This document shows, one piece after another, positions 1,177 to 61,573 of a DNA stretch of 64,000 nt. Positions within the stretch are counted from its first letter, which is position 1. Each line of letters opens with the position of its first letter. A program made the position numbers and the translations under genes. The DNA is taken from positions 124,001 to 188,000 of IMG/VR virus record IMGVR_UViG_3300042691_055965; one strand, written 5' to 3'. Under the pieces are notes generated by a model. It was given only the letters and a program-made list of their open reading frames with translations, was not told where the DNA came from and searched no databases.

Positions 1177-2406
1177 ATGGCTTTACCAAAAAAAATAAAA
1201 AAAACTTTACCTTTGATTCCTACCAAAACTGGTAAGGAACGTAGGGAAGAATTACTTCAAGACATAACAAAAGATGGGACTTATCTTCCAAAAGGGGTTT
1301 TACATGCCGACTTGGATAAAGGAATGTTAGATTTTGTTAAAGATAAACTTGAGCTTGTGGTTGACAAAAAAAAAGTCCCAACAATAGATAGAATCATTAC
1401 CAACCAAAGTTGGGCACAATTTACACAAACTTGGGATTTTCAAGATTTAGATAAAAACATAACGTTACCTTTTATCACAACATTAAGGGCTCCCGAAGTA
1501 AAGTACGGTACAAATAATGCGGGTAGAGCAAACATACCTGAAAGACGACAATTTTTTTATTATACAGTACCCACTTGGGACGGACAAAGAAAAGGTGCTG
1601 ATGTTTATAAAATACCACAACCAATCCCTGTGGACTTAACCTTTACGGTTAAATTATTTTGTAATAGAATGCGTGAAGTCAATGAGTTCAACAAAATTTT
1701 GATGAGGACTTTCACATCTAAACAAGCTTACACACAAATAAAAGGACATTATATTCCATTAACGTTAGAAGATGTTAGTGATGAATCTGCTAAAGAATTA
1801 GAAAAAAGGAAATATTATATTGCAAGTTATAAGATTTTGATGATGGGACTTTTAATTGATGAAGAAGAATTTGAAGTTACACCAGCAATTTCAAGGCAAC
1901 TAACGTTGTTTGAATTTACAACAAACAATAGAAAAAAACGTGCAGTAATTGAACCGTCAAATCCAACAAACTTCGATTTAGATTTTACATTCGTAACAGG
2001 GAACACACAACTTACTGAAGTTTTTAGATATGATGCTGATATTGTTGTTGATAGTATCGTGAATTTAGATAACTGTTATTCAGTAACATATTCTTCAATA
2101 ACAAATAACACCCTAACGTACACTGATTGTTCAGGTGTTATCACTACAGTCCCAACCAATTCAGGTGATACTAATACTATATGTGTAAAATCAGCAACAG
2201 CACCAACATTCACGGTTTCATCGGGTGGAACAATTACTGAAGGGGTGTCTTGTGCTTCAAGTTATTCTGTGTATATAAACAACAATTATATTGGAGATAA
2301 TGTTCCTGTGATACAAATTAGTAGTGGTGATACCTTAAAAATAATTGCTTACAAAAATAACCCATCTGAAGTTTCGATTATTAAAACTAAAGTGTCACTT
2401 ATTTAA
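1177..2406 (+). CDS. putative tail terminator/sheath stabiliser (T4 gp15-like) with a C-terminal beta-rich, Cys-containing extension
   Basis: LPFIT..R and P.PVDLTFTV segments resemble gp15-type proteins; directly upstream of sheath; Ser/Thr-rich C-terminal domain. Confidence 0.55.
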   Translation: MALPKKIKKTLPLIPTKTGKERREELLQDITKDGTYLPKGVLHADLDKGMLDFVKDKLELVVDKKKVPTIDRIITNQSWAQFTQTWDFQDLDKNITLPFITTLRAPEVKYGTNNAGRANIPERRQFFYYTVPTWDGQRKGADVYKIPQPIPVDLTFTVKLFCNRMREVNEFNKILMRTFTSKQAYTQIKGHYIPLTLEDVSDESAKELEKRKYYIASYKILMMGLLIDEEEFEVTPAISRQLTLFEFTTNNRKKRAVIEPSNPTNFDLDFTFVTGNTQLTEVFRYDADIVVDSIVNLDNCYSVTYSSITNNTLTYTDCSGVITTVPTNSGDTNTICVKSATAPTFTVSSGGTITEGVSCASSYSVYINNNYIGDNVPVIQISSGDTLKIIAYKNNPSEVSIIKTKVSLI

Positions 2407-2556
2407 TTATTCACCATACAAGTCTTTTGGTTTTTCACAAGTTTTTCTTATAAGACTTTCTATAAATTTGTGAATTTTTAATCCTTTTGCTTCGCAGTAT
2501 TTTTTTAACATAAAATGACTTTCTTCTGAAATCTTTATATTTTTAATTTTTTTCAT
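2407..2556 (-). CDS. 49-aa putative ribbon-helix-helix DNA-binding protein
   Basis: MKKIKNIKISEESHFMLKKYCEAKGLKIHKFIESLIRKTCEKPKDLYGE: alternating beta strand (KNIKIS), helix, G turn, helix. Has TATTTAT 4 nt upstream on its own strand. Below the ORF-track length cut-off. Confidence 0.65.
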   Translation of the reverse strand: MKKIKNIKISEESHFMLKKYCEAKGLKIHKFIESLIRKTCEKPKDLYGE

Positions 2557-2573
2557 ATTAATAAATATTTTTT

Positions 2574-2593
2574 AAGGTAGAAAAAAGGTAGAA
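2574..2593. repeat. AAGGTAGAA direct repeat x2 (11-bp period), candidate operator
   Basis: Copies at 2574-2582 and 2585-2593 in the divergent intergenic region between the RHH gene and the sheath. Confidence 0.4.
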
Positions 2594-2653
2594 TTTTTTC
2601 ATACTATATGTCCTAATAAAATAATCAACAAAGTTTTTTACAGATTTTGAACA

Positions 2654-2661
2654 TATTTATA
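2654..2661 (+). promoter_or_regulatory. TATTTATA element upstream of the tail sheath
   Basis: Exact motif in the intergenic region. Confidence 0.6.
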
Positions 2662-2693: not shown

Positions 2694-5600
2694 ATGGCAT
2701 CTACAAACAAAGTATTCGTTTCGCCTGGAGTTTATACTTCAGAAAGAGATTTAACTTTTGTTGCCCAAAGTGTGGGGGTAACTACATTGGGGATTGTTGG
2801 TGAAACCTTACAGGGTCCAGCCTTCGAACCTATTTTCATAACTAATTTCGACGAATATCAAGTATATTTCGGTGGAACAAGTCCTGAAAAATTCACAAAC
2901 ACACAAATACCTAAATACGAAACATCTTATATTGCAAAAGCGTATTTGCAACAATCAAATCAATTATTTGTTACAAGAGTTTTAGGTTTGTCAGGTTATG
3001 ACGCTGGACCGTCTTGGTCAATTACAACTATTGGTAATGTTGATCCAGGAACTATTGGTTTATCTGCAAATACATCAGGTGTACAAATCGTTAACTTTAC
3101 TGGAACTACAGGCGGAAGTTCTAACGTTGTTATTACAGGTACATTACCATCTCTTATTTCATCAGATTTTTACAATCCATACACTACATTCAACGGGGGT
3201 ACATCTTCTTTGAATGCTAATTTCCAATCGTTTATTGCAAACGAAATCGTTTACCAATCAACCGCATCTTTAAATGCTCAATCAGGTACAACCGCATTAT
3301 TTTGGGGTACAGTAAGTGATGCGACTTTTAACTCTGTTACAGGTGCAACAATTGGTGCAGGATTAAGTGCGTATTCAGAAACTTTTGGTGTAAGTAATGT
3401 ATTATTATCTCAAGCAAATTTATCAGCAACAACAAACGATCCTTGGTACTACGCATTATTTGACTATTCACAAGTTGCAAGTGTTGGTTCTTACGATGGT
3501 TATGGTTTTGGTACTACTTTAGGAGCAATCAATTCTATCGGTGTTGGTTCTTATTCAGGTTATTGTATTATTTCAGGTACAACATATTCAGGTACACCGT
3601 ATTCAGGTTGGGATGATTTAGTTATTGCAACTTTAAGAAGTAGAGGTATCACTAACTATTCTTCAACACAACACGGGCCATTGTATCAAGTTACAGGTAT
3701 AACCGATGTTCAAATGGTTTGTACTGGTTCATATTCGGCGGTAACTAAAGACCCATATGCAACATTTGTTGTAAGTGGTATTACAAAAGATGCTGATACG
3801 TTCACTTTTGAAACATCATTGTTAAGTACGGATACTGAATATCTTTCTAAAGTATTTGGAAGAAGTAACTTTGGTAAAGATAGAACTGAAGTTCCTTTAT
3901 TTGTTGAAGAAGTTTATTCAAGTTTATTATTGAACGGATACAGACAAGGTAAGGTACGAGGTTTGAATTGTGATTTAATCGAATTGGATAGTGCGGTTTC
4001 ACAAGCATCAGGTTCAATAGGTTTTTATTTAGAACAATATCAAACACCAGAAACCCCTTATTTGGTTTCTGAACTTCGTGGTAATAAAGTTTATAAGTTA
4101 TTTAAGTTCAAACTTATTTCTGATGGAAATGCTGCAAACAGACTTGTTAAGATTTCAATTGGAAACGTTTCTTTTAACAATGGAACATTTGATGTATTTG
4201 TCAGAGACTTCTATGACAACGATCAAAACGTAAGAGTTATCGAAAGTTTCACGAATTGTTCATTAAATCCATCTTTGAATAATTATGTAGCAAACAAAAT
4301 AGGTACAGCTAATGGTGAATACAACTTAAATTCTAAATACATAATGTTAGAAATGAGTGATGAAGCACCTGAAGATGCACTTCCTTGTGGATTTGAAGGT
4401 TACATTATGAGAAACTATAATCAAGCACAACCACCATTTATAGTTTACAAAACAAGATACTTACAACCTGGTGACGTTATTTACAACCCACCATTTGGTT
4501 CTACAAGTGGAGCTGATAATCCTGTTATTTCAAACGGTGAAAACCCAAGAAAGGCATACTTAGGTATATCTAATATTACTGGTGTTGACTATGATTATTT
4601 TGAATACAAAGGTAAACAATTACCTGCTAATTTAGAAACTGATACTACAGGTCCAAGTTGGACTTATCAAATCAAAGGGTTCCACATGGATAGTGGGGCA
4701 ACTGTGGTAACTATGTTTGATACATTAACATCAGCAACTACACAAGCGTTTGAAGTAGGTGCTGGAAGTTTTAATTCAGAACCAACTGATCCTGATAACC
4801 CTTATTACAGATTGAACACACGTAAATTTACTTTGTATCCTTATGGTGGTTTCGATGGATGGGATATCTATAGAGAATATAGAACAAACAGTGACACATA
4901 TGCTCTTGGACAAACAGGTTATAAATATGGTGCGGCACCATCATCACAATTCCCTACAGCAACAGGATGGGGAGCGTTCAAACAAATTTCAGGTCCTAAT
5001 CAAGAAGTGTGGGCAAATACTGACTATTACGCATACAAATGGGGACAAACAACTTTTGCTAACCCTGAAGCGGTAAACATTAACGTATTTACAACACCTG
5101 GTATTGATTATGTTAACAACTCAAATCTTGTTGAAGATGCGATTGATATGGTTGAAACAGATAGAGCGGATTCAATTTACATATGTACTACACCTGATTT
5201 CAACTTGTTCTTACCAACATTTAGTGATGTAACAGAAGGTTTAATTTATCCACAAGAAGCGGTAGACAACCTTGAAGAAACAGGAATTGATTCAAACTAT
5301 ACAGCAACCTATTATCCTTGGGTATTGACAAGGGATTCAGTTAATAACACACAGATTTATTTACCAGCAACTGCTGAAGTAACTAAAAACTTGGCGTTGA
5401 CTGATAACATTGCATTCCCTTGGTTCGCATCTGCAGGTTACACAAGAGGTTTAGTAAATTCAATTAAAGCTCGTAAGAAGTTAACACAAGAAGATAGAGA
5501 TACTTTATATAAAGGAAGAATCAATCCAATTGCTACTTTTTCTGATGTGGGTACAGTAATTTGGGGTAACAAAACTTTACAAATTAGAGAGTCTGCTCTT

Positions 5601-5912
5601 GACAGAATTAATGTTAGAAGATTGTTGTTACAAGCAAGAAAACTAATTTCAGCAGTAGCAGTAAGATTACTATTCGAACAAAACGATGATAAAGTAAGAC
5701 AAGACTTCTTGGATTCTGTAAACCCAATTTTGGATTCAATTAGAAGAGATAGAGGTTTAATTGACTTTAGAGTAACTGTTTCTAACACACCTGAAGATTT
5801 AGATTCAAATACATTGACAGGTAAAATCTTCTTAAAACCAACAAGAGCGTTAGAATACATTGACATCGAGTTTGTGATTACACCAACAGGAGCATCATTT
5901 GATGACGTTTAA
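2694..5912 (+). CDS. contractile tail sheath protein
   Basis: N-terminal FVSPGVYTSERD and GPAFEP; C-terminal PWFASAGYTRG, INPI, IWGNKTL, RINVRRL and KPTRALEYIDIEF are classic sheath motifs. Confidence 0.96.
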   Translation: MASTNKVFVSPGVYTSERDLTFVAQSVGVTTLGIVGETLQGPAFEPIFITNFDEYQVYFGGTSPEKFTNTQIPKYETSYIAKAYLQQSNQLFVTRVLGLSGYDAGPSWSITTIGNVDPGTIGLSANTSGVQIVNFTGTTGGSSNVVITGTLPSLISSDFYNPYTTFNGGTSSLNANFQSFIANEIVYQSTASLNAQSGTTALFWGTVSDATFNSVTGATIGAGLSAYSETFGVSNVLLSQANLSATTNDPWYYALFDYSQVASVGSYDGYGFGTTLGAINSIGVGSYSGYCIISGTTYSGTPYSGWDDLVIATLRSRGITNYSSTQHGPLYQVTGITDVQMVCTGSYSAVTKDPYATFVVSGITKDADTFTFETSLLSTDTEYLSKVFGRSNFGKDRTEVPLFVEEVYSSLLLNGYRQGKVRGLNCDLIELDSAVSQASGSIGFYLEQYQTPETPYLVSELRGNKVYKLFKFKLISDGNAANRLVKISIGNVSFNNGTFDVFVRDFYDNDQNVRVIESFTNCSLNPSLNNYVANKIGTANGEYNLNSKYIMLEMSDEAPEDALPCGFEGYIMRNYNQAQPPFIVYKTRYLQPGDVIYNPPFGSTSGADNPVISNGENPRKAYLGISNITGVDYDYFEYKGKQLPANLETDTTGPSWTYQIKGFHMDSGATVVTMFDTLTSATTQAFEVGAGSFNSEPTDPDNPYYRLNTRKFTLYPYGGFDGWDIYREYRTNSDTYALGQTGYKYGAAPSSQFPTATGWGAFKQISGPNQEVWANTDYYAYKWGQTTFANPEAVNINVFTTPGIDYVNNSNLVEDAIDMVETDRADSIYICTTPDFNLFLPTFSDVTEGLIYPQEAVDNLEETGIDSNYTATYYPWVLTRDSVNNTQIYLPATAEVTKNLALTDNIAFPWFASAGYTRGLVNSIKARKKLTQEDRDTLYKGRINPIATFSDVGTVIWGNKTLQIRESALDRINVRRLLLQARKLISAVAVRLLFEQNDDKVRQDFLDSVNPILDSIRRDRGLIDFRVTVSNTPEDLDSNTLTGKIFLKPTRALEYIDIEFVITPTGASFDDV

Positions 5913-7077: not shown

Positions 7078-7566
7078 ATGGCTGATTTGTTAATGAAAAT
7101 GCCCTTTCAGTATGAACCTAAAAGAGCTAACCGATTTATAATTACTTTCCCAACATCCTTGGGTATCAACTCTTGGTATGTTGAAAGTACGTCACGACCG
7201 AGTATTAAAATAGAATCCAAAGATATTCCTTTCTTAAATACTAAAACTTATGTTGCTAGTACTTTTGAATGGGAAACAATTAATGTAAAGTTTAGAGATC
7301 CAATCGGACCTTCTGCATCACAAGCATTAATGGAATGGGTTCGATTACACGCTGAATCAGTAACAGGACGTATGGGTTATGCTGCTGGTTATAAAAAAGA
7401 TGTTGATTTGGAACTTTTAGACCCAACGGGGGTTGCTGTTGAAAAATGGATTTTACAAGGATGTTTCTTAGAAGGTGTTAAATTTGGTGACTTAGGTTAC
7501 GATAAAGCGGATATCATGACTGTTGATGCTACACTTCGTCCTGACAGATGTATATTAGTTTACTAA
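7078..7566 (+). CDS. tail tube protein (T4 gp19-like)
   Basis: 162 aa; EPKRANRF, RP, WETINVKFRD, EW, YKKD..L..LDP.G..VEKW.L.G motifs; follows the sheath. Confidence 0.92.
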   Translation: MADLLMKMPFQYEPKRANRFIITFPTSLGINSWYVESTSRPSIKIESKDIPFLNTKTYVASTFEWETINVKFRDPIGPSASQALMEWVRLHAESVTGRMGYAAGYKKDVDLELLDPTGVAVEKWILQGCFLEGVKFGDLGYDKADIMTVDATLRPDRCILVY

Positions 7567-7655: not shown

Positions 7656-8408
7656 ATGGATCAAACAGCGGCATATGGACAACAAAATTTTAACTTACCA
7701 CACGATGTTGTAAAATTACCTTCAAAAGGTGTATTTTATAAACCAAAAAAAGAATCATTGAAAATAGGTTATTTAACGGCAAGTGATGAAAATTTATTGA
7801 TGTCACAAAATAGTTCATCTGACAATTTAATAACAACACTTTTAAGAAACAAAGTATATGAACCTGGATTTGACATAAATCAGTTGTTAAATACTGATGT
7901 ACAAGCAATTCTTATATTTTTAAGAAATACTTCGTTTGGACCTGAATATAATATATCGGTTAAAGATCCTGTAACAGGAACATACTTTGAAACAACCTTA
8001 ATGATGGATGCGATTGATTTTGAAAAACAAACGGTATTTCCTGACGAAAATGGTTTATTTACTTTCAAACTACCAAAGAGTAACAAAGAAGTAAAATTTA
8101 AATTGTTGTCTTTAGCAGACGAAAAAGAAATAGAAAATTTCACAAAAAGTTACCCACAAGGAATGGTTGCACCTACAGTCACAAAAAGATTAGAAAAACA
8201 TATTGTTGAAATTGATGGTGAAAAAGATAAAGGTAATATATCACAATTCATTTTACAAATGCCAATAATGGATTCGAAAGAACTAAAAAAATTCATTGAT
8301 GTTTGCGAACCTAAACTTGATTTAAAAAGAACAGTAATAGCCCCGTCAGGAGAAAAGGTAACAGTGAATATGTCCTTTGGGGTTGAATTTTTTCGTCCTT
8401 TCTTCTGA
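7656..8408 (+). CDS. baseplate hub/tail assembly chaperone (T4 gp26-like)
   Basis: LPS.G..Y, LT..DE..L, D..AILIFLR..SFG..Y and a repeated LPKS...VKFK; ends in FF; lies between tube and tape measure. Confidence 0.75.
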   Translation: MDQTAAYGQQNFNLPHDVVKLPSKGVFYKPKKESLKIGYLTASDENLLMSQNSSSDNLITTLLRNKVYEPGFDINQLLNTDVQAILIFLRNTSFGPEYNISVKDPVTGTYFETTLMMDAIDFEKQTVFPDENGLFTFKLPKSNKEVKFKLLSLADEKEIENFTKSYPQGMVAPTVTKRLEKHIVEIDGEKDKGNISQFILQMPIMDSKELKKFIDVCEPKLDLKRTVIAPSGEKVTVNMSFGVEFFRPFF

Positions 8409-31458: not shown

Positions 31459-31494
31459 TTTATATAAAATACCAAGATATTATATTTATTGAAT

Positions 31495-52380: not shown

Positions 52381-53115
52381 ATGATAAAAGTAGGAGCAAA
52401 AGAAATAGTAAAAGAAGGATTGGTATGTTTTATGGATCCTGCAAACACGAGTTCATATCAACCAAGTGGTACAACATATTATGATTTGTCTAGTTTTGCT
52501 GCAAAAGCCGTTTTTCAAAATTTTGATACAAATAATAACTTCGATCCGAGTGACGGTGGTGGTAGTATAATTTTTGATGGTGTAGATGATAGTATTCGTG
52601 TTTTTACATATGGTAGTGTAGGTATTACTAATAGTGCTGAAACTGACTCCTATTTATTTACTGATGAAGTAACATTAGAGGCGTTTGTAAAACCAACATC
52701 GTTTACTAGTCAACCTAACATAATAGGTAAAGGTACAAATTTAGGATATAGATGTAGATTTACGTCTGATCAAAGATTTTGGTTATATTCTTCTAGTGGT
52801 GCTAGTATTAATAACATTCAAACCGCATCCAATTTGATAAACCCAAATGAATGGGTTCATGTTGTTGCGGTTTTTAGTCAGTCGGGTCTTTTTGCTTATG
52901 TAAATGGAGTGCTGCAGGCATCAAATTCACAACCATTTTTACCCGACATATTAAACCCAACGAGTATAGCTTGTGTATTACATTTTGGTAGATTTTGTAG
53001 TTCTGGTGAACTATTTGAAGGTAAAATGGGTATTATAAGGGTTTACCATGCGGCTCTTTCCGCTGATCAAGTACTATCAAACTTCAATGCTGATAGGGAT
53101 AGATACGGAATATAA
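52381..53115 (+). CDS. LamG/concanavalin A-like lectin domain protein
   Basis: GLV...DPAN..SY..SG....DLS, FDGVDD, TLEAFVKP, W.HVVAV, YVNG, F.G.MG..RVY..ALS...V..NF. Confidence 0.88.
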   Translation: MIKVGAKEIVKEGLVCFMDPANTSSYQPSGTTYYDLSSFAAKAVFQNFDTNNNFDPSDGGGSIIFDGVDDSIRVFTYGSVGITNSAETDSYLFTDEVTLEAFVKPTSFTSQPNIIGKGTNLGYRCRFTSDQRFWLYSSSGASINNIQTASNLINPNEWVHVVAVFSQSGLFAYVNGVLQASNSQPFLPDILNPTSIACVLHFGRFCSSGELFEGKMGIIRVYHAALSADQVLSNFNADRDRYGI

Positions 53116-53178: not shown

Positions 53179-54375
53179 ATGAAAATATTTGTACAAATTG
53201 CATCTTATCGTGATCCTGAACTTTTACCAACTATTAGGGATTGTATCAATAAGGCAAAATACCCTGAAAATTTAACTTTTGGTATCTGTTGGCAACGTGA
53301 CGAAACAGAAACTTTGGAAGAATTTTTAAATGATTATAGATTTAGAATATTAGATTATCATTGGAGTGAAAGTAAAGGGCTGTGTTGGGCTCGAAGTGAA
53401 ATACAAAAACTTTGGAAAGGGGAAGAATATACTCTACAATTAGATTCACATCATAGGTTTTTGAAAAATTGGGATGAAGAATTAATCGAAATGATGAACA
53501 TGACAGGTTCGAAAAAACCAATAATTTCAACATATGCTGGAATGTATCAACCATCAGACGACAAGTTATTAAATTTTGAACCTTATAAAATGGTGGCATC
53601 TAATTTCACACCAGGTGGTACTATACTTTTTAGACCTCACGCAATCCCAAACTGGGAAACATTGGAAAAACCAATACCTGCAAGATTTGTCAGTGGACAC
53701 TTTTTTTTCACAATTGGTAAACACTGTGAAGAATATAAATATGATCCAAACATATATTTTGCTGGTGATGAAATTAGTCTATCGATTCGTTCATTTACAT
53801 TAGGTTATGATTTATTTCACCCATATAAGACAATTATTTGGCACGAATACACAAGGGAAGGTAGAACAAAACACTGGTCGGATTTCAATGAGGAAAATAA
53901 AAATAAAGGTGTTGTTGAAAAACAATGGTGGGAAATGGATAATGAATCCAAAAGAAGATTGAGACATATGTTGCAAGAAGAAGATAATAATATTGATCTT
54001 GGAATTTATGGGTTAGGAAATGAAAGGACACATAAAGAATACGAAGATTATGCTGGTATAAATTTTAGACTTAAAAAACTTCACCCCGAAACGTTAAAAG
54101 GTACAAATCCACCAATTAATGATACTACAGAATGGTATTTGGAAGAAGAAAAAACATATACCTATACTTTAGAAATACCCAAAACTGAAAATTTTAAATT
54201 CATATATATTGGTATAGAAAATGAAAAAGGTGATGTTTTATACAGACAAGATTTATTAGAATATCAAAATAAATTAGACATAACAATTAAAAGTTTTTCC
54301 AAACCACACAAATGGATTTATTGGGTAAACGATATCGATGGGAATTGGATTAATAGGGTAGATACAAATTTATGA
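53179..54375 (+). CDS. GT60-like glycosyltransferase (Skp1/polypeptide alpha-GlcNAc transferase family)
   Basis: IFVQIASYRDPEL..TI, SKG.CWAR, LQLDSHHRF..NWD, F.GDEI..SIR.FT.GYD, WHEY. Confidence 0.85.
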   Translation: MKIFVQIASYRDPELLPTIRDCINKAKYPENLTFGICWQRDETETLEEFLNDYRFRILDYHWSESKGLCWARSEIQKLWKGEEYTLQLDSHHRFLKNWDEELIEMMNMTGSKKPIISTYAGMYQPSDDKLLNFEPYKMVASNFTPGGTILFRPHAIPNWETLEKPIPARFVSGHFFFTIGKHCEEYKYDPNIYFAGDEISLSIRSFTLGYDLFHPYKTIIWHEYTREGRTKHWSDFNEENKNKGVVEKQWWEMDNESKRRLRHMLQEEDNNIDLGIYGLGNERTHKEYEDYAGINFRLKKLHPETLKGTNPPINDTTEWYLEEEKTYTYTLEIPKTENFKFIYIGIENEKGDVLYRQDLLEYQNKLDITIKSFSKPHKWIYWVNDIDGNWINRVDTNL

Positions 54376-55169
54376 AAATAGGAGCATTTTATCAGTCAGG
54401 ACACAAGTTAGTTGCGTGTTATAAAGCATTGGAACAATTAAGAAAAGTATATCCTAATATACCTGTTGCTTTATATGAAGACGGTTCTAAAATATTGGAA
54501 CAGGTAGCAAAAAAATTTAATTGTGATTATAAATGGATTGAACAACAAGGGACAAACCACCCTACATCTGGAAGGGTTTTTGTTAAAGAAGGTGGGCAAA
54601 TTGATTGGCTACGAAGAATCTATGATGCTTGTTTGACAACACTAAAAGATGTTGAATGGGTGGTACACTACGAAGACGACGTTTGGTGTAGGTTTGAAAT
54701 AACCAAACCACCAAAATTTGATATTTCAGGAGCCAATGGTCCATTATATACAAATGAATTATATTCATATTTAAAAAATAGATTTGATGTTTACGATGAG
54801 TCAAGACATCATTGGAGTGAAAATGGTTCTTTACAAAGTTACGGTGCCTGTGGTGGTGCTATTTTTAATAGAGAAAAATTTATCTACATATTTGAAAATA
54901 TCGACAAAGTTCCGTGGGATTATATCTATAAATTGGATACCAGACCGATTGAGTGGTGTGATGCAACGCTTTCGTTTTTATTTCAGTATTTTGGATTTAC
55001 TAGTGGGGTATGGGAAGATTGGGCACAATACGATAGTAAAAATATAGGTAATTGGTGGGATAAAAGTGGTTGGTCGGTTCCTATGGAAGAACAACCTAAT
55101 GTTGCTTTTATTCATGCGTATAAACATTATTATTGTTATAAACCTGAAGATATTGAAATAGATTTTTAA
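54372..55169 (+). CDS. putative GT-A glycosyltransferase
   Basis: LRKVYP..P..LY.DG, VVHYEDDVW (DxD-like), GACGG..F, D..LS..F, IH.YK; coupled to GT60 gene (ATGA overlap). Confidence 0.7.
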   Translation: MKIGAFYQSGHKLVACYKALEQLRKVYPNIPVALYEDGSKILEQVAKKFNCDYKWIEQQGTNHPTSGRVFVKEGGQIDWLRRIYDACLTTLKDVEWVVHYEDDVWCRFEITKPPKFDISGANGPLYTNELYSYLKNRFDVYDESRHHWSENGSLQSYGACGGAIFNREKFIYIFENIDKVPWDYIYKLDTRPIEWCDATLSFLFQYFGFTSGVWEDWAQYDSKNIGNWWDKSGWSVPMEEQPNVAFIHAYKHYYCYKPEDIEIDF

Positions 55170-55216: not shown

Positions 55217-56845
55217 GTGCCAAATTTATTATTTGAAGGTTGTTGTTACGAGGGTTATCAGTATTTCACTGATGAAGCAGCTTGGATTGCAACTGGTGGA
55301 ACCGCGACTACAGGACAAACATATCATTTTTCAGGTGACCCAATAGTTCCCGATGGTTGTTATACTATAGTATCGGCATTCACATCAGGTTTTACATCTG
55401 TATCATTTACAAATTTAGATGGTGTTTATACAACACAAACAGGATGTACCGATTCTTTGTGTTTGACAGGTGTTTGTTGTAGTAATGATGTTTGCATTAA
55501 CATTTCGGTTTCAACATATAGTGCGTATAGCGGTAATTATGTTGTTGCTGGAAGTTATAATTCTTACCCTTATTGGACAGGTGCAACACAACCTGGGTAT
55601 ATTGGGTTCAATGGTACAAATTGGTGTCTTTCTGATTCACTAACCGGAACTTGTATTTTTTATGGGTCGAACCCAACATTATCAACTTGCCCTGATTTAG
55701 ATACTTCAGTTTATAATACAGGAATTTGTCCACCTGTACCAACACCATTCGATCCGTGTGGTGCATTTGATTTTGATGTTTTAGTTGCTTGTGATATACC
55801 AACACCAACTCCAACACCAACACCGACACCAACACCTACACCGACTCCCACACCAAGTCCAACACCTAATTTATGTTCAGGATTTTCTGTGTCAATATCT
55901 TTTAGTGCTACAACACCTACACCAACACCAACACCAACACCTACACCAACGCCTACGGTTTATCCTTATCCAATAACTGGACAAAGTGTGACTTTTGTTA
56001 TTGACGAAGGTTATTTTAATTGTGTTTCAATAAAACAATTACAGGATTGTGATAATGGTGAAACATATTTAGTTGCCGATCCTTTAATTTTCCAATTATC
56101 GGCAATAACCACAGGCACTACGTTCTTGGGCGCTATAAATGGAGAATTCAAGTGTGTAACATATGTGGGTGATGTTTTGGGAAGTCCATCCGATTTGTTA
56201 ACATTTATATCACTTACATACAGTGGGGATTGTAGTTCATGTATCGCGCCAACACCAACTCCAACACCTACACCAAGCCCAACACCAACACCGACACCTA
56301 CACCGACACCTACACCGACACCAACATATAGTGCGAACACATCATTCGTGTTTACATCTTGTACATCAAATTCGATGATAATTCAAAGTTTGATTCCACC
56401 TACTAACATTTCTGTTGGTAACGTTGTAAAAAATAGTTCAGGAAATTGTTTCACTTATATTGGTTATTTTGTGAATTATACTCCACCATCTGGGTTTATT
56501 TGGTCGACTATAAATTCATTTACGGGTGTTACTGCAACAACTTACACGACTTGTTTAGAGTGTTTGACACCAACACCAACACCTACACCATTATTCAATA
56601 CATATAACGGTAAAGGTGAATTCGGAGTATCGTGTCCTGTTTGTGAATTGACAAATGGTGGTACAAATGTGACTTTCTATAGGTCTTATAGTACTTTATC
56701 TTTACAGACAGGGGATTATATTTATGAAGATACTGCACTTACCATACCTGTAATATTATCATACATTAAGTACGGTGGTAAAATATACAGTGTTGATAGT
56801 AATGGTATGATAACAGAATTTTGTATAGTAAACGGTAATTGTTAA
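55217..56845 (+). CDS. Cys-rich virion protein with four (PT)n mucin-like tracts
   Basis: 542 aa, GTG start; small Cys-paired domains separated by PT tracts. Confidence 0.8.
55799..56590 (+). repeat. four (Pro-Thr)n coding tracts
   Basis: Tracts at about 55799-55867, 55910-55957, 56249-56326 and 56567-56590. Confidence 0.95.
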
Positions 56846-57694: not shown

Positions 57695-57695
57695 T

Positions 57696-59345
57696 ATGGC
57701 AGGATATACTGGAAATACTTGTGATATTTTAACCATCTTCCCAATGGGTTTGATTTGTAGTTCAACAAATGCGTATACTCCATTTACAAATGATGGTGCG
57801 ATAACATTGTATATTACAGGAGGTACACCACCGTATACAATAAATTGGAGTAATGGTGCTCATTCACAAAATTTAACAAACTTACAATCAGGAAATTACA
57901 CTGCCACGGTAATTGATTACTATGGGGATTTTACAGCAACAACTACTTGTAATGTTGGATTTGATACTTTTTATTTAGAAAAATTCACAAATTGTTTGGA
58001 TTCAAACAATCAAATTTATTTTTTAGCAAATATTAATAATCAATACCAAGTTGATAAAGTTTATTCTTTAAGTTCACAACTTGGATGTTGGATTAGTGAA
58101 GGTTTACTTTTATATAGTGCTGAAACATATAGTAATTTTACAGCAACAACGGTTTCGGGACCTTTTGATACTTGTCCTGAATGTTTACCAACAGTACCTG
58201 TGATTTTTAATACTTCTGGATTGTGTTTGACACTAACATCTTTTAATGTTGTAACACAAACACAATATTATTCAGGAGGTACAATCAATGGATATCCGTC
58301 ATGGACATCCAACACATCGAATGAAGTTATTTATTTTGATAACACACAATCTAAATGGAAAGTTTCTGGATGGACGGGTGGAGGTATCCCACAACTTCAA
58401 TCAATACAAAGTCCACCAATCGGAGCTTGGACTGTAGTAGGGTTACCACAGTTATTGGCAGGTAATACTGCGGTTGCCGTAACACAAGGGGATTGTCAAG
58501 CAGTAATTGTTGCAAATATCAGTAGTACACCACCAAGTTGTGAAGGTGCAACCGATGGTTATATAAATGTAACATCGGTTATTGGCGGTACACCACCATA
58601 TACATATTCATTAGTGAATGATCAAAATTTTTATCAAATATCAAATATATTCAATGGTTTGTCAGAAGGTGGTTATACAGTATATGTTCAAGACGTTTTT
58701 GGAAATATCACTATAAGTCAAGTTAATTTGAATTCTTTAGTTAGCCCAACATTATATACGTTGAATTTAGTTGTGCAACAAGTAAATCTTGGTAACAACT
58801 CGACAACAAACCAAACTAGAAATTGGACTTACCAAGTTACAGTATCACCAGCACTTCCAATAGGTAAACAGATCAATTTTGATATAACACACGTATCAAC
58901 ATCAATTTATGGAACAACCAACAATGGTTCACCTGTATTATCTTATACCCAATCAACAGGAACTACAGGTGGTGGACAATACTTAACAAGTACAACACCA
59001 ACAACCACTTCTACTTCAGCAACAACTGTTGCATGTACCACATTAAATAATTACACACAACACGTAACAACTACAACCATAAGACAATATAACGCAAGGA
59101 TAACAGGTACATTTGGAACGGATAGTGTTTTTGGTAACGTCACACAAAGTGTAACTGTTATAAATGGTGGAACACCATGTGCAGTATTCGGTAATATTAA
59201 TGATAGTGTTTCAATAACAAATATACAATTGGTAAACCAAGCACCGTGTGAATTGGTGAACACAACCGTTCAACCCGTGTCTTTCGGTGTTTCTAAAACG
59301 GGAACACCTGGAATAGTTGGAAGTAATGTAAATGTGAGTGGATAA
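57696..59345 (+). CDS. SprB-repeat, Thr-rich virion protein
   Basis: DGAITL.ITGGTPPYTINWSNG....NL..G.Y..TV.D and PSC.G..DG.I.V....GGTPPYTYSL. Confidence 0.75.
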   Translation: MAGYTGNTCDILTIFPMGLICSSTNAYTPFTNDGAITLYITGGTPPYTINWSNGAHSQNLTNLQSGNYTATVIDYYGDFTATTTCNVGFDTFYLEKFTNCLDSNNQIYFLANINNQYQVDKVYSLSSQLGCWISEGLLLYSAETYSNFTATTVSGPFDTCPECLPTVPVIFNTSGLCLTLTSFNVVTQTQYYSGGTINGYPSWTSNTSNEVIYFDNTQSKWKVSGWTGGGIPQLQSIQSPPIGAWTVVGLPQLLAGNTAVAVTQGDCQAVIVANISSTPPSCEGATDGYINVTSVIGGTPPYTYSLVNDQNFYQISNIFNGLSEGGYTVYVQDVFGNITISQVNLNSLVSPTLYTLNLVVQQVNLGNNSTTNQTRNWTYQVTVSPALPIGKQINFDITHVSTSIYGTTNNGSPVLSYTQSTGTTGGGQYLTSTTPTTTSTSATTVACTTLNNYTQHVTTTTIRQYNARITGTFGTDSVFGNVTQSVTVINGGTPCAVFGNINDSVSITNIQLVNQAPCELVNTTVQPVSFGVSKTGTPGIVGSNVNVSG

Positions 59346-59359
59346 AATAAGATAAAAAG

Positions 59360-59367
59360 TATTTATA
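59360..59367 (+). promoter_or_regulatory. TATTTATA element
   Basis: Exact motif 4 nt before ATG 59372. Confidence 0.6.
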
Positions 59368-59371
59368 AAAT

Positions 59372-61573
59372 ATGTCATACATAATCAAAACAACAAGTGG
59401 TTTAATAAATACAATTCTAACAGACGCTGCTAGGAAAAAAATATCGCAAGGAAACTTTAAGATTTCTTATTTTCAAGTAGGTGATAGTGAAGTGTGTTAT
59501 GATTGTATTACAGGATTGAAACCAACCAATCTAAATGTTTTGATGCCACAATATAACGCACAAAACACAACACCGGCACCTGAAAGTAATCGTTTACAAG
59601 TAAAGTATCCACTTTACGTAGACTCTACATCAGGAAGTACTTACGGTATACCTTTTGATTCATCATTTGTTGATAACATCTATAATACTGCAGCACCAAG
59701 AGGATTTTTTAGTGGTAATGGTTTGACTTACAGTGCGTACACATCATCGGCATATACAATTACACCTAATTTTATTGTTGATAACACAACTTTAAATTCA
59801 GGGACTACTTTAGTATTGTCTGCTAACACTTTAGATGTTACCGTTTCAGGAACAGTAACTCCTGGTATGATATTAAATTTATTTACAAATAATTCTGTCA
59901 CACCATTAAGTGGAAACGCACCATTATTTACTTATGTTGTTGTTGGAATAACTGGTGATACCTATTCGGCAAACACAGTTACAGTTGAAGTTGATAGACA
60001 ATTACCTGACTTTTTGAATATGGGTTACACAGGAAATTCTATTGCCATTTTCTACCCATCTGGAATGACTGCTCTTTATGATTCCGTGACACCTGCACCT
60101 TATTGGGCTACAAATGTAATTAATTTCGAAACAAATTGTGACGTATCACAAGCTGACGTTAAAATATGGAATATGAACATTCCATGGACTGAATCGCCAG
60201 CTGGTTTATTTGTCAGTCAAAATTTGGATTACAATTCGTTCAAATCTACAGGATATACGGGTTCTAAAGAATATTTTGGTTACAATAGTGATACAGGACA
60301 AGTGGATACTGGAGGTGTTTATTTTGTGAACTCTCTTGGACAAAAAATAACGTTAAATCCATCAGATTCAAAGGCAGTTGCAATATTACACTATACAAAC
60401 CAAGCTATTGATAATTTTTATGGTGAAAAGTTCGCTCAACAAGAATATGATTCATCAAATCCGGGTGGAACAGGACAAGCAAGAAACTTTAAAATAAGTA
60501 TTCCTTGGTTGATGTGGCATAAAAATTCAAATGGCACAATTGGAGAAGAATTTTTTACTGATCCAAGTGGGTTTACTTCAATTGACTTATTTCAAGTTTA
60601 TTATATCAAATCTAAAAAAGATGCGGAATTCAACAACCCTGGTATTAGATATTACTATCTTTGGGATACACATGCTAACATCGATGGATACCCAAACAGA
60701 GTTGGTAAAGTTTTCCCTGACTTGAAAATGGTAATTTTTGATGATGATGAAATTGTTGCAGCAATGTCATATAAATCAAACAGAAGTTGGACATTACCAG
60801 CACCTAAAATAGGTACAATAATTCCAAATGCTTGTGAAGGTGTTCTTGGATTAGATGAGGGTTTATTAAGTGCTAACACACAAACCGCATTCGTTACGTA
60901 TAGATTTAATAATAGTGCTTTTACAAATTCATTACATTGTAATTATTACACTAATATTTCACCACAGTTAGTTGATCCTATTCAAACAACCTACAATATA
61001 TTTTTAAAATTTGGAAACGAATTTCCGTTTTTAGTTTCGGACGTTAGTACTATACCAACTGGATATACCGCAAATGAAATGAAAGTATTGGTACAAAAAG
61101 TGGCATCAGGTACAACAAGACCTAATCCTACACAATGGAAAGAAATTGATGTAATGTCACAACTATCGGCAACTACTAGTAACAATTTTTTAACACTATC
61201 AGGTTTGACAGGAGCAACTATACAAATTACCAAAGATATGTATGATACTGCACCAACATACAACTTGAATAACTATATTGATTTACCAACAGCGGCATTA
61301 AGTGGAATTACTCTTAATTTTGGGGGTGAATACTTTTTCTACGGTTCAATTCAAACGGATATTCAAGCAACAATATATGTGATGAATTATCTATGTAATT
61401 TGGGACAAACACAGTTTTTAAGTTCAACCAATCCGACTTGGGATGGGACACCACCGTACATCACTGAAGTTGCTCTTTACAATGAAAATAAAGAACTTAT
61501 GGTTATTTCAAAGATACAATCCCCTGAAAAAAGACAGGGAATCCAACAGTATCCAGTTAAACTTGATTTTTAA
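59372..61573 (+). CDS. baseplate/fibre-attachment structural protein
   Basis: N-terminal LTDAAR..I..G.F.I.YF..GDSE and C-terminal YITEVALY.....L..ISK...P..R resemble tail-collar/fibre anchor domains. Confidence 0.6.
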   Translation: MSYIIKTTSGLINTILTDAARKKISQGNFKISYFQVGDSEVCYDCITGLKPTNLNVLMPQYNAQNTTPAPESNRLQVKYPLYVDSTSGSTYGIPFDSSFVDNIYNTAAPRGFFSGNGLTYSAYTSSAYTITPNFIVDNTTLNSGTTLVLSANTLDVTVSGTVTPGMILNLFTNNSVTPLSGNAPLFTYVVVGITGDTYSANTVTVEVDRQLPDFLNMGYTGNSIAIFYPSGMTALYDSVTPAPYWATNVINFETNCDVSQADVKIWNMNIPWTESPAGLFVSQNLDYNSFKSTGYTGSKEYFGYNSDTGQVDTGGVYFVNSLGQKITLNPSDSKAVAILHYTNQAIDNFYGEKFAQQEYDSSNPGGTGQARNFKISIPWLMWHKNSNGTIGEEFFTDPSGFTSIDLFQVYYIKSKKDAEFNNPGIRYYYLWDTHANIDGYPNRVGKVFPDLKMVIFDDDEIVAAMSYKSNRSWTLPAPKIGTIIPNACEGVLGLDEGLLSANTQTAFVTYRFNNSAFTNSLHCNYYTNISPQLVDPIQTTYNIFLKFGNEFPFLVSDVSTIPTGYTANEMKVLVQKVASGTTRPNPTQWKEIDVMSQLSATTSNNFLTLSGLTGATIQITKDMYDTAPTYNLNNYIDLPTAALSGITLNFGGEYFFYGSIQTDIQATIYVMNYLCNLGQTQFLSSTNPTWDGTPPYITEVALYNENKELMVISKIQSPEKRQGIQQYPVKLDF

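What the first reader, a model, noticed from the sequence alone, without database searches (positions are those of the whole stretch)
1177..61573. Virion-wide [S/T]-[G/A]-x-T tetrapeptide enrichment, a possible modification sequon
Seen: unrelated structural proteins carry many [ST][GA]xT motifs. The 733-aa protein at 59372 has about 19 by hand count (SGST, SAYT x2, SGTT x2, SANT x3, TGDT, SGMT, TGYT x2, SGFT, SAFT, SATT, SGLT, TGAT, TAPT, SGIT), against a rough expectation of 2-3 from composition. The same pattern appears in the sheath (SANT, TGTT, SGTT, TGAT, SATT, TGIT, SGIT, SGAT), 42752 (SGGT, TGNT, TGLT, TGVT, SGYT, TAYT, SGFT, SGLT), 51080, 55217, 57696 and the gp15-like tail. It is rare in the replication enzymes. 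Inference: one motif in non-homologous folds suggests selection for an enzyme recognition site, plausibly for glycosylation. It differs from the Bacteroidota D-[ST]-[AILVMT] sequon.
Basis: partly seen in the sequence, partly recalled or inferred. Interest (0 to 1): 0.75.

Follow-up and report, generated by a model that had tools for sequence, protein, structure and literature searches.

The report
Tail-protein [S/T]-[G/A]-x-T motif, possible sequon
The exposed tail, baseplate and fibre proteins of this uncultured jumbo phage, but not its head or replication proteins, carry four to ten times more copies of the motif Ser/Thr, Gly/Ala, any residue, Thr than chance allows, and the pattern of evolution fits a selected enzyme recognition site, possibly for sugar attachment, though no enzyme has been tied to it.

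Summary
The count is real. In window 1177-61573, 37 ORFs hold 140 [ST][GA]xT against 37.5±5.9 in shuffles. The 229-kb genome holds 366 against 118, and shuffling within 10-residue blocks does not remove the excess. After (PT)n linkers are masked, SGxT, SAxT and TGxT rank 1-3 of all three-residue gapped motifs. Only S/T, G/A and T are enriched at the three defined positions, and x is almost never Pro.

The motif is tail-wide, not virion-wide. Sheath outer domains, peripheral baseplate proteins and fibres score 3.6-5.6x. The head module scores 0.64x. Tube, hub, gp25-like and gp6-like proteins have none. Several of the richest proteins are paralogous fibres.

T4, two other phages, an unrelated 154-kb phage and 80 bacterial loci score 1.06-1.55x. 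In relatives the core tail orthologues keep the excess while sites turn over. Some lineages of the same protein families have none.

This fits a selected motif read by a trans-acting factor. Glycosylation is plausible but unproven. The genome has about 12 glycosyltransferases, including a GT60-like polypeptide GlcNAc-transferase homologue inside the tail module. That gene also occurs in a phage without the motif, and (PT)n linkers are its more obvious substrate.

The parts
1177..2406 (+).
   Evidence: 5 motifs against 0.7 expected, p 0.002 by shuffle, Poisson 8e-4. No Pfam or PHROG hit. The orthologue in G5 keeps 5; those in G6, G7 and G2 have 0.
2694..5912 (+). Tail sheath, 1072 aa, motif-enriched in its non-core part
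   Evidence: phrog_23 E 1.5e-54, PF17482 and PF04984 on residues 792-1069, T4 gp18 homologue. 11 motifs against 3.0. The sites lie at residues 124-361 (9 sites), 667 and 680, with none in the conserved C-terminal core. Orthologues hold 8-10 against about 3.
7078..7566 (+). Tail tube (internal part), no motif; internal control
   Evidence: phrog_4542 E 2e-23. 0 motifs against 0.1 expected.
7656..8408 (+). Baseplate hub, no motif; internal control
   Evidence: phrog_150 E 7.6e-14. 0 motifs against 0.2 expected.
31489..31956 (+). gp25-like baseplate wedge protein, no motif
   Evidence: phmmer hit to T4 gp25, E 3.5e-8. 0 motifs.
31961..33802 (+). gp6-like baseplate wedge subunit, no motif
   Evidence: phrog_219 E 6e-20. 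0 motifs against 1.0 expected.
40193..41896 (+). 567-aa baseplate-module protein, modestly enriched
   Evidence: 3 motifs against 0.6. Orthologues hold 4, 6, 4 and 8 against 0.5-0.9.
42752..43834 (+). 360-aa baseplate-module protein, strongly enriched
   Evidence: 8 motifs against 0.8, Poisson 2e-6. Orthologues in G5, G6, G7 and G2 hold 8, 9, 6 and 5 against 0.7-1.0.
44779..47760 (+). 993-aa baseplate-module protein, enriched
   Evidence: 5 motifs against 1.3. Orthologues hold 5, 7, 7 and 10.
47751..50456 (+). 901-aa tail protein with SprB/Ig-like repeats and a (PT)n linker at residues 768-805, strongly enriched
   Evidence: PF13573 SprB E 1e-17. 22 motifs against 4.3. The motif sits at recurring positions of the repeats, whereas head-side paralogous domains have near-misses. 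Linker.
51080..52093 (+). 337-aa fibre-like protein, the densest in the window; a paralogue of the fibre cluster outside the window
   Evidence: 17 motifs against 2.3. It shares 42-56% identical modules with genome 29416, 33407, 36031 and 42928.
52381..53115 (+). ConA-like/LamG lectin-fold protein, one of four paralogues next to fibre genes
   Evidence: PF13385 E 1.2e-20. Paralogues at genome 31223, 31935 and 32636. 2 motifs against 0.4.
53179..54375 (+). GT60-like glycosyltransferase (polypeptide GlcNAc-transferase family) inside the tail module; candidate modifying enzyme, link to the motif unproven
   Evidence: PF11397 E 2e-67 and phrog_24687 E 4e-98. Invariant D89-S90-H91 in A2. The nearest Swiss-Prot model is Dictyostelium Skp1-hydroxyproline GlcNAc-transferase, followed by TarS and several polypeptide GalNAc-transferases. 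Present in 5 of 5 near-complete relatives.
54372..55169 (+). 265-aa protein of unknown function overlapping the GT60 stop codon
   Evidence: No family hit. Conserved only in G5, at 82%.
55217..56845 (+). 542-aa tail protein with four (PT)n linkers, enriched
   Evidence: 14 motifs against 3.0. Linkers at residues 193-219, 228-250, 343-373 and 449-460.
57696..59345 (+). 549-aa tail protein with SprB repeats, enriched
   Evidence: PF13573 E 9e-13. 9 motifs against 2.8.
59372..61573 (+). 733-aa conserved tail/baseplate protein, the clearest case
   Evidence: 19 motifs against 1.9, Poisson 2e-13. More than 2900 homologues. AF2 model pLDDT 85, with the motif's middle residues in coil at 15 of 19 sites. 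Best structural neighbours are phage tail and baseplate proteins, at borderline Z 8.9.

Best explanation
Φ-[S/T]-[G/A]-x(not Pro)-T is a selected recognition motif on the outward-facing parts of the contractile tail. It occurs in sheath outer domains, peripheral baseplate proteins and fibres of a clade of uncultured aquatic jumbo myoviruses with a T4-like structural core and a probable Bacteroidota host.

The most likely reader is a phage-encoded cytoplasmic enzyme that puts an O-linked group on the Ser/Thr or the Thr before or during tail assembly. The most likely group is a glycan, started by one of the glycosyltransferases conserved in the clade (GT60-like at window 53179, GT2 at genome 83145, GT2_5 domain at genome 97083). 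In this genome it would be extended by a strain-specific island of glycosyltransferases, a dTDP-sugar pathway and methyltransferases at genome 86.7-97 kb.

Shown: the excess, its residue specificity, its restriction to the tail, purifying selection on it, site turnover with density kept, and its absence from other phages and from some lineages of the same protein families.

Inferred: that a trans-acting factor reads it, that the factor is a glycosyltransferase, and which residue is modified.
For: Statistics.

Extended motif, the same in three genomes 39-49% identical in core proteins: hydrophobic at -1 (1.8-2.0x), charged residues depleted, Pro at x 0.2x, 0 and 0.

G and A are equally favoured at +1 while N and D are not. 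S and T are favoured at 0 while N and D are not. T is favoured at +3 while S, V and I are not. This is not the usual turn or beta-propensity pattern.

Selection in the 733-aa family: +3 Thr kept 0.86 against 0.63 for other Thr (p 0.002), S/T class 0.96 against 0.74 (p 4e-4), G/A class 0.95 against 0.72, x below the average.

Turnover between this genome and G2: 6 shared sites, 44 and 38 private, both still 5-8x enriched. Cluster representatives of the 733-aa family carry 0 to 25 motifs in 194 alignment columns. Zero-motif homologues have N/D/K/E loops at those places. Their baseplate neighbours are at expectation, including one contig at 35% GC.

Controls: T4 1.06, Flavobacterium phage immuto 1.55, Mel-JY01 1.36, G1 1.31, bacteria 1.17.

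Same Ig-like/SprB domain, motif in tail copies and near-misses lacking the +3 Thr in head-side copies: 0 against 3.5 expected.

Exposure proxies: coil at strand or helix ends in the AF2 model, sheath sites outside the conserved core, inner parts (tube, hub, gp25-like, gp6-like) free of it.

Enzymes: at least 9 glycosyltransferases plus RmlC-like, RmlD-like, epimerase/dehydratase, UDP-GlcNAc 2-epimerase, and FkbM-type and other methyltransferases. GT60-like gene in the tail module. GT60, GT2 and GT2_5 are conserved in all four relatives examined. GT60 is in 5 of 5 near-complete relatives. A published lineage of aquatic jumbo phages with Bacteroidota hosts reports four core glycosyltransferase groups (PMC12619734).
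Against: There is no chemical evidence of any modification.

No enzyme co-varies with the motif. A 71%-identical GT60 gene sits in an unrelated complete 154-kb phage whose proteins score only 1.31x. 80 bacterial GT60 neighbourhoods score 1.17x with no enriched protein.

From my own knowledge, characterised GT60 enzymes act on hydroxyproline of Skp1 or on Thr in Pro/Thr-rich mucin-like repeats. (PT)n linkers flank the GT60 gene here, so they are its more obvious substrate.

The sugar island is specific to this genome, yet relatives keep the motif. The island could instead serve DNA hypermodification or host-surface change, both known roles of phage glycosyltransferases (PMC12619734).

Hydrophobic flanks and the preference for spacings of 3, 5 and 7 residues also fit a strand-loop-strand structural idiom. 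Solvent exposure could not be computed because no coordinates were returned. The complex prediction gave no answer. The exposed capsid protein is not enriched (3 against 1.3), which a general glycan shield would not predict.
Confidence: 0.4

Rival explanations
1. It is a clade-specific structural idiom with no modification. Φ-[ST]-[GA]-x-T-Φ would be a favoured way to end one beta-strand or helix and start the next in the loops of these tail proteins, perhaps through side-chain to main-chain hydrogen bonds of Ser/Thr and a small residue in the turn. It would spread by descent and convergence in proteins rich in Thr, Ser and Gly.
For: Hydrophobic residues flank the motif at -1 and +4. In the AF2 model the motif sits in coil just after or before strands and helices. 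Odd spacings of 3, 5 and 7 are favoured and 4 and 6 are avoided, as in short repeated strand-turn units. The richest proteins are repetitive fibre paralogues. Flavobacterium phage immuto fibres show a weak excess of 2.5-3.9x.
Against: Universal turn physics should act in T4, Mel-JY01, G1 and bacteria, where O/E is 1.06-1.36. N and D, the usual partners of G in turns and of S/T in Asx/ST-turns, are not enriched. V and I are not enriched at +3, and A equals G at +1. The structural contexts are mixed: after strands, after helices, at helix N-termini and in long coil. The same folds exist with no motif at all, and the same domain in head-side proteins has near-misses. Sites turn over while density is kept.
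Confidence: 0.27
2. The motif is read by a trans-acting factor other than a glycosyltransferase. Candidates are a tail or fibre assembly chaperone, a kinase, an acyl- or sulfotransferase acting directly on Ser/Thr, or a host surface component to which the tail adheres.
For: All the evidence for selection on the motif is silent about the chemistry. A sulfotransferase gene lies between fibre-like genes at genome 110259-111080. LamG lectin-fold paralogues lie next to the fibre genes. Restriction to the tail would fit a tail-specific assembly factor.
Against: The sulfotransferase is found only in this genome and G7, whereas the motif is clade-wide. No kinase or chaperone candidate was identified. 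A chaperone site repeated 19 times in one globular protein and kept in the mature sheath outer domains would be unusual.
Confidence: 0.15
3. The glycosyltransferases and the motif are unrelated. The GT60-like enzyme would glycosylate the (PT)n linkers. The sugar island would modify DNA or the host surface. The tetrapeptide excess would have another, unknown cause.
For: (PT)n linkers are abundant in tail proteins beside the GT60 gene and across the clade. Some relatives encode proteins with 37% Thr. GT60 occurs without the motif in G1 and in bacteria. The sugar island is strain-specific.
Against: This does not explain the motif itself. G1 has GT60 but only one short PT-rich segment, so the PT link is no tighter than the motif link.
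Confidence: 0.13
4. It is a compositional or mutational artefact, such as a DNA word, codon bias, low-complexity segments or repeats inflating the count.
For: The enriched proteins are rich in Thr, Ser, Gly and Asn. Codon use at motif Ser and Ala differs somewhat from background. Fibre paralogues contribute many copies.
Against: Local block shuffles keep z above 20. Both Ser codon boxes and all Thr and Gly codons are used. BLAST found no internal repeats. Non-repetitive, BLAST-unrelated proteins show the strongest ratios: 733 aa 10x, 649 aa 13x, 360 aa 10x. A zero-motif lineage exists at 35% GC.
Confidence: 0.05

Closest known systems
Mycobacteriophage virion glycosylation (Freeman et al. 2023, as cited in PMC12619734)
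   Same: Glycosyltransferases encoded by a tailed phage modify virion proteins in the bacterial cytoplasm, and the glycans coat exposed virion surfaces.
   Different: There the glycans sit at the C-termini of capsid and tail tube subunits. Here capsid and tube lack the motif, the sites are dispersed through loops of sheath, baseplate and fibre proteins, and they follow a defined tetrapeptide. Modification is unproven here.
Chlorovirus PBCV-1 major capsid protein glycosylation (PMC5408694)
   Same: A large DNA virus carries its own glycosylation genes and uses attachment sites that are not the cellular sequon.
   Different: That case is N-linked to Asn in a eukaryotic virus capsid protein with four sites. 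This one is a putative O-linked Ser/Thr motif with hundreds of sites on a bacteriophage tail.
Bacteroidota general O-glycosylation sequon D-[ST]-[AILVMT]
   Same: It is a short sequon with a hydroxyl acceptor in the probable host phylum.
   Different: That system acts in the periplasm. Its sequon is not enriched here: 0.98x genome-wide and 0.84x in the motif-rich proteins. The two motifs share no defining residue apart from the S/T.
Eukaryotic N-glycosylation sequon N-x-[ST], x not Pro
   Same: The formal logic matches: a gapped short motif, a free middle residue that excludes Pro, Thr preferred over Ser at the distal position, and gain and loss of sites along lineages with density kept.
   Different: The acceptor, enzyme and compartment all differ. 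N-x-[ST] itself is not enriched here (1.11x).
GT60 polypeptide GlcNAc-transferases (Dictyostelium Skp1-hydroxyproline GlcNAc-transferase Gnt1; Dictyostelium and Trypanosoma cruzi polypeptide alpha-GlcNAc-transferases)
   Same: The protein at window 53179-54375 matches PF11397 at E 2e-67, carries an invariant D-S-H, and is nearest to Gnt1 among Swiss-Prot models. From my own knowledge, the family contains enzymes that glycosylate proteins directly, one of them in the cytoplasm.
   Different: From my own knowledge, the known acceptors are hydroxyproline or Thr in Pro/Thr-rich repeats, not [ST][GA]xT. The phage protein has an extra C-terminal beta-sandwich at residues 320-398. Its acceptor is unknown.
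Autotransporter heptosyltransferases (BAHT family; from my own knowledge)
   Same: They are cytoplasmic O-glycosylating enzymes that put many sugars on Ser of beta-rich repeat proteins, and they recognise a short strand-loop-strand element rather than a strict sequence.
   Different: The enzyme family, sugar and substrates differ. No homologue was looked for or seen here.

Membership tests
Enzyme-read protein modification sequon | A short motif with fixed residue classes, over-represented beyond global and local composition | tested here: met
Enzyme-read protein modification sequon | Selection on the motif as a class: within-class swaps tolerated, free middle position, density kept while sites turn over | tested here: met
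   Lineages without the motif.
Enzyme-read protein modification sequon | Sites are solvent-exposed on the assembled particle | tested here: inconclusive
   Only proxies were available. The motif's middle residues are in coil at 15 of 19 sites of the AF2 model. Sheath sites lie outside the conserved core. Inner parts lack the motif. No coordinates were returned for a surface-area calculation.
Enzyme-read protein modification sequon | A cognate enzyme that co-occurs with the motif | tested here: inconclusive
   GT60-like, GT2 and GT2_5 are conserved in all motif-bearing relatives examined. GT60 also occurs without the motif. Contigs of zero-motif lineages were too short or not held.
Enzyme-read protein modification sequon | A covalent mass shift at the sites | not testable with these tools
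   This needs mass spectrometry of virions or of co-expressed proteins.
CAZy GT60 / Pfam PF11397 (window 53179-54375) | Match to the family profile above the curated cut-off | tested here: met
   228.5 bits against a cut-off of 21, E 2e-67.
CAZy GT60 / Pfam PF11397 (window 53179-54375) | GT-A fold with a D-x-D or D-x-H metal-binding motif | tested here: met
   D89, S90 and H91 are invariant in A2. The N-terminal Rossmann-like half is modelled at pLDDT 70-88. The top Foldseek hit is Dictyostelium Gnt1 at E 4.7e-12 and 28% identity, though TM is only 0.32 because the model is poor.
CAZy GT60 / Pfam PF11397 (window 53179-54375) | Transfers GlcNAc to a polypeptide acceptor | not testable with these tools
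   The complex prediction with a motif-rich peptide gave no answer.
Bacteroidota general O-glycosylation | Sites follow D-[ST]-[AILVMT] | tested here: not met
   O/E 0.98 genome-wide and 0.84 in motif-rich proteins.
Mycobacteriophage-type virion glycosylation | Phage-encoded glycosyltransferases are present | tested here: met
Mycobacteriophage-type virion glycosylation | Targets are the C-termini of capsid and tail tube subunits | tested here: not met
   The capsid protein has 3 motifs against 1.3 expected, at residues 177, 329 and 334 of 603. The tube has 0.
T4-like contractile-tailed phage (structural core) | Homologues of gp17, gp18, gp19, gp20, gp21, gp23, gp25 and gp6 | tested here: met
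   phmmer against T4 proteins. PHROG hits for sheath, tube, hub and wedge.
Moraphages (PMC12619734) | Aquatic jumbo phages up to 307 kb, Bacteroidota hosts, T4-like structural orthologous groups, four core glycosyltransferase groups | not tested
   The description fits: relatives are 292-317 kb, SprB repeats are present, and core glycosyltransferases are shared. No moraphage sequence was compared.

The most novel reading that the evidence does not exclude
A widespread clade of uncultured aquatic jumbo phages coats the outside of its contractile tail, baseplate and fibres, but not its head, with O-linked glycans. The glycans would be attached in the cytoplasm at a previously undescribed tetrapeptide sequon, Φ-[S/T]-[G/A]-x(not Pro)-T. 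A conserved initiating enzyme would start the glycan, and a strain-specific island of glycosyltransferases, sugar-nucleotide enzymes and methyltransferases would diversify it. Sequon density would be kept by selection while individual sites come and go, as with the glycan shields of animal viruses.
Probability: 0.33. Interest if true: 0.85.

Novelty: new variant of a known kind. Interest (0 to 1): 0.7.

Why it matters
Protein glycosylation of phage particles is known from very few cases, and none has a defined sequon. If this motif is one, glycosylation sites could be read from sequence in thousands of metagenomic phage genomes. The 733-aa protein alone has more than 2900 homologues.

It would also show a tail-specific glycan coat with strain-specific sugar sets. 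That bears on host recognition, on resistance to host or environmental proteases and lectins, and on how phage tails avoid sticking to non-host material.

It would give glyco-engineering a short cytoplasmic O-glycosylation tag.

Even if no sugar is attached, the signal is unusually clean evidence of lineage-specific selection on a tetrapeptide across unrelated folds, and that still needs an explanation.

Tried and rejected
- **DNA-level cause.** Rejected. Both Ser codon boxes and all synonymous codons are used.
- **Local composition or low complexity.** Rejected by block shuffles and by masking PT linkers.
- **Internal repeats.** BLAST found no self-hits. Paralogy among the fibre proteins is real and is reported.
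- **A general property of phage structural proteins.** Rejected by T4, immuto, Mel-JY01 and G1.
- **A motif required by the fold.** Rejected by zero-motif homologues and by site turnover.
- **Host sequon D[ST][AILVMT] and N-x-S/T.** Neither is enriched.
- **Tying the motif to the GT60-like gene.** This failed. The gene is universal in the clade, but it is also present at 71% identity in a phage without the motif and in many bacteria whose neighbouring proteins are not enriched.
- **Finding long contigs of zero-motif lineages for gene-content comparison.** The contigs were 2.7-50 kb and the records are not held.
- **Complex prediction of the GT60-like protein with a 51-residue motif-rich segment.** No answer.
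- **Fold of the 733-aa protein.** Foldseek found nothing significant. VIA-align gave only borderline matches to phage tail and baseplate proteins.
- **Solved-structure relatives of the GT60-like protein.** None were found by sequence.
- **Close cultured relatives in the phage collection.** None were found. The nearest sheaths are about 30% identical.
- **Literature.** Searches for a matching sequon or for tail glycosylation in phages found nothing specific.

Full report
**Setting.** The window is bases 124001-188000 of a 229,188-bp phage record with 31% G+C.
- phmmer against T4 proteins finds homologues of terminase gp17, portal gp20, prohead protease gp21, capsid protein gp23 (all outside the window, genome 55-65 kb), sheath gp18 (window 2694) and gp25 (window 31489).
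- PHROGs adds the tube (7078), baseplate hub (7656) and a gp6-like wedge subunit (31961).
- The window therefore holds the sheath-tube-hub block, three unannotated giant ORFs, and a baseplate, tail and fibre module at about 31.5-61.6 kb.
- SprB repeats in two tail proteins point to a Bacteroidota host.
- No close cultured relative exists in the phage collection. The nearest sheaths are about 30% identical: Microcystis phage Mel-JY01 and Flavobacterium phage immuto.
- Metagenomic relatives of 292-317 kb are common. They fit the published description of 'moraphages', aquatic jumbo phages with Bacteroidota hosts and four core glycosyltransferase groups (PMC12619734). I did not compare sequences with those genomes.

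The sheath has 11.
- Window 1177-61573 holds 140 motifs against 37.5±5.9 in 1000 per-protein shuffles, with a maximum of 58. The genome holds 366 against 118.
- Shuffling only within blocks of 10, 20 or 40 residues leaves O/E at 2.7-2.9 with z above 20.
- I listed all three-residue motifs in six gapped shapes without prior choice. SAxT, SGxT and TGxT came directly after the (PT)n linker words. They rank 1-3 once those linkers are masked. The best motif in a control phage of similar size reaches only z 7.5.
- By residue: S 3.7x and T 2.6x at position 0, with all 18 others between 0.6 and 1.3. G 3.1x and A 3.0x at position 1. T 3.07x at position 3, where S is 1.10, V 1.06 and I 0.90. Moving the Thr by one residue abolishes most of the excess.
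- The four combinations score SGxT 3.4, SAxT 4.5, TGxT 2.9 and TAxT 2.0.
- At position 0, serine is encoded by TCN at 55% of sites and AGY at 45%, so the signal is at the protein level.

**What the finding overstates.**
- By genomic region, a classification independent of the motif, O/E is 4.40 in the fibre cluster (genome 29.4-44.1 kb). It is 5.58 at 73.4-80 kb, 3.57 at 103.9-120.7 kb, 3.73 in the sheath block and 4.53 in the baseplate and tail module.
- It is 0.64 in the head module and 0.36-1.03 in non-structural regions.
- The gp23-like capsid protein has 3 against 1.3, and the portal has 0. The tube, hub, gp25-like and gp6-like proteins have 0. The three giant proteins score 1.0-1.95x.
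- The motif therefore marks the outer tail, not the whole virion.
- In the sheath, the 11 sites lie at residues 124-361, 667 and 680. None lies in the conserved C-terminal core at 792-1072.
- The richest proteins are not independent. 51080 and the fibre-like proteins at genome 29416, 33407, 36031, 42928, 105850 and 112354 share 40-75% identical modules.
- The proteins of 733, 649 (genome 103871), 360, 567, 993, 542 and 409 aa and the sheath are unrelated by BLAST, and some of them have the highest ratios, 10-13x.

**It is not a general property of such proteins.** The same measure gives:

| Control | O/E |
|---|---|
| T4 structural region | 1.06 |
| Flavobacterium phage immuto | 1.55 |
| Mel-JY01 | 1.36 |
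| Unrelated complete 154-kb phage (G1) | 1.31 |
| 80 bacterial loci | 1.17 |

**Evolutionary behaviour.**
- Among 120 close homologues of the 733-aa protein, most sites are kept. S and T swap at position 0 and G and A swap at position 1, while the +3 Thr is often invariant.
- The +3 Thr is kept in 0.86 of sequences against 0.63 for other Thr (p 0.002). The S/T class is kept in 0.96 against 0.74 (p 4e-4), and the G/A class in 0.95 against 0.72. The x position is less conserved than the average position.
- In four relatives taken whole (G5, G6, G7, G2), the core tail orthologues keep the excess. The 360-aa protein has 8, 9, 6 and 5 against about 0.9. The 733-aa protein has 17, 14, 10 and 10 against 1.4-2.0.
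- The sites move. Against G2, at 39% identity, 6 sites are shared, 44 are private to this genome and 38 are private to G2.
- Among cluster representatives of the 733-aa family at 30-53% identity, counts range from 0 to 25 and the motifs occupy 194 different alignment columns. Homologues with none have N/D/K/E-rich loops or gaps at the places where this protein has the motif.
- On contigs of three such lineages, the neighbouring baseplate orthologues are also at expectation, and one of these contigs has 35% G+C.
- The extended context is the same in G0, G7 and G2: hydrophobic at -1 (1.8-2.0x), charged residues depleted, Pro at x 0.2x, 0 and 0, and Asn or Ser favoured at +5.

**A natural experiment inside the genome.**
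- Ig-like/SprB repeat domains occur both in tail proteins (47751, 57696) and in proteins encoded just after the capsid gene (genome 65628, 67811, 68661), and also in genome 6775.
- In the tail copies the motif recurs at fixed places in the repeat: NLSGGTYTV, QLTGGTAPY, IITGLTVGT.
- The aligned places of the head-side copies read SEGF, SAGN, SGGE, TGGV and SGGQ. These are near-misses that lack the +3 Thr.
- The three head-side proteins hold 0 motifs against 3.5 expected (P 0.03).
- The domain therefore folds without the motif, and whether the motif is present depends on which part of the particle the protein belongs to.

**Structure.**
- The AF2 model of the 733-aa protein has pLDDT 85 and pTM 0.83. 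The motif's middle residues are in coil at 15 of 19 sites. The contexts are mixed: after strands, after helices, at helix N-termini and within long loops.
- The fold has no significant match in the PDB by Foldseek. VIA-align gives borderline matches to phage tail and baseplate proteins.
- No coordinates were returned, so burial could not be measured.
- Successive motifs prefer spacings of 3, 5 and 7 residues (17, 29 and 12 against about 7) and avoid 4 and 6. This fits tandem five-residue units such as SAYTsSAYT. It is the best point in favour of a structural reading.

**Candidate enzymes.**
- A minus-strand block at genome 83-99 kb encodes at least nine glycosyltransferases (GT2, GT4, GT32-like, GT2_5 fused to GT4).
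- It also encodes RmlC-like, RmlD-like and epimerase/dehydratase enzymes, a UDP-GlcNAc 2-epimerase and two methyltransferases.
- Inside the tail module, window 53179-54375 matches PF11397 at E 2e-67 and phrog_24687 at E 4e-98.
- An alignment of seven homologues has an invariant D-S-H.
- The model of this protein is poor, at pLDDT 64. Its nearest Swiss-Prot model is still Dictyostelium Skp1-hydroxyproline GlcNAc-transferase (E 4.7e-12, 28% identity), followed by TarS and several polypeptide GalNAc-transferases.
- GT60-like, one GT2 (genome 83145) and the GT2_5 domain are conserved in G5, G6, G7 and G2. The 86.7-97 kb sugar island is private to this genome. GT60 is found in 5 of 5 near-complete relatives.

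**Why the enzyme link stays open.**
- A 71%-identical GT60 gene lies in G1, a complete unrelated phage without the excess.
- Homologues at 36-54% identity are widespread in Verrucomicrobiota, Acidobacteriota and Proteobacteria, and their neighbours show no enrichment.
- From my own knowledge, characterised GT60 enzymes act on hydroxyproline or on Thr in Pro/Thr-rich repeats. (PT)n linkers are abundant in the tail proteins on both sides of the GT60 gene and across the clade, and some relatives encode proteins with 37% Thr.
- On the one zero-motif contig that reaches far enough, an HtrL/YibB-type glycosyltransferase sits roughly where this genome has GT60. That is suggestive, but it is a single case.
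- The complex prediction gave no answer.

**Verdict.**
- The excess is real, highly specific, restricted to the outer tail, under selection as a class, and peculiar to this phage clade.
- The best reading is a motif read by a trans-acting factor. O-glycosylation by phage enzymes is the leading candidate at about 0.4, and a clade-specific structural idiom is the main rival at about 0.27.
- The other rivals are a factor other than a glycosyltransferase, a case in which the glycosyltransferases and the motif are unrelated, and a compositional artefact. The last is largely excluded.
- If the sequon reading is right, it would be a new variant of virion glycosylation: a defined tetrapeptide, tail-specific, and predictable from sequence.

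Noticed in passing
window 47751-50456 (aa 768-805) and 55217-56845 (aa 193-219, 228-250, 343-373, 449-460): Long (PT)n linkers join the domains of tail proteins on both sides of the GT60-like gene. PxPxP and PTP are the top over-represented words in the whole genome. They are an obvious alternative substrate for that enzyme.
   Followed up: partly
L108:232-5601 and L106:18-6437 (relatives G6 and G022): Relatives encode giant mucin-like proteins of 1789-2139 aa with 25-37% Thr next to the 733-aa homologue.
   Followed up: no
genome 110259-111080 (L006:10259-11080): A sulfotransferase (PF13469 and PF00685, phrog_27463) lies between two fibre-like genes. Among the relatives examined it is shared only with G7.
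   Followed up: partly
genome 86691-97083 (L005:6691-17083): An island of dTDP-sugar enzymes, methyltransferases and about eight glycosyltransferases has no counterpart in four relatives. The flanking GT2, GT2_5 and unknown genes are conserved.
   Followed up: partly
L083:12282-13523 (G1, complete 154,360-bp phage with terminal repeats): A GT60-like gene 71% identical to the window's lies in a phage that shares only 5 of 213 proteins with this genome. This suggests recent transfer between phage lineages.
   Followed up: partly
window 10588-16617, 16926-23363, 33876-40196: Three ORFs of 2009, 2145 and 2106 aa have no PHROG hit and only background motif density.
   Followed up: no
window 29269-31128: A 619-aa ORF is about 66-69% identical at the DNA level to an unannotated gene of Microcystis phage Mel-JY01 and to a gene annotated as 'recombinase' in a Vibrio phage. 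A 77-base stretch matches ribonucleotide reductase genes of Streptomyces phages.
   Followed up: no
window 52381-53115; genome 31223-33361: Four paralogous ConA-like/LamG lectin-fold proteins of about 240 aa lie next to the fibre genes.
   Followed up: no
genome 65628-69257: Three proteins encoded just after the capsid gene carry Ig-like/SprB domains paralogous to those of the tail proteins. They look like head decoration proteins and hold no motif against 3.5 expected.
   Followed up: yes
L014:13345-14046 and L014:15777-17549 (Flavobacterium phage immuto): Two structural or fibre proteins of this cultured Flavobacterium phage show a weaker excess of the same motif: 5 against 1.3 and 10 against 4.0. 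I did not check whether this phage has glycosyltransferases.
   Followed up: no
whole record G000: The record is 229 kb, whereas near-complete relatives are 292-317 kb. It may be incomplete, so absent genes should not be over-read.
   Followed up: no
genome 101970-102371 (L012:5970-6371): A small WYL-domain protein lies beside the nucleotide-metabolism and glycosyltransferase block.
   Followed up: no
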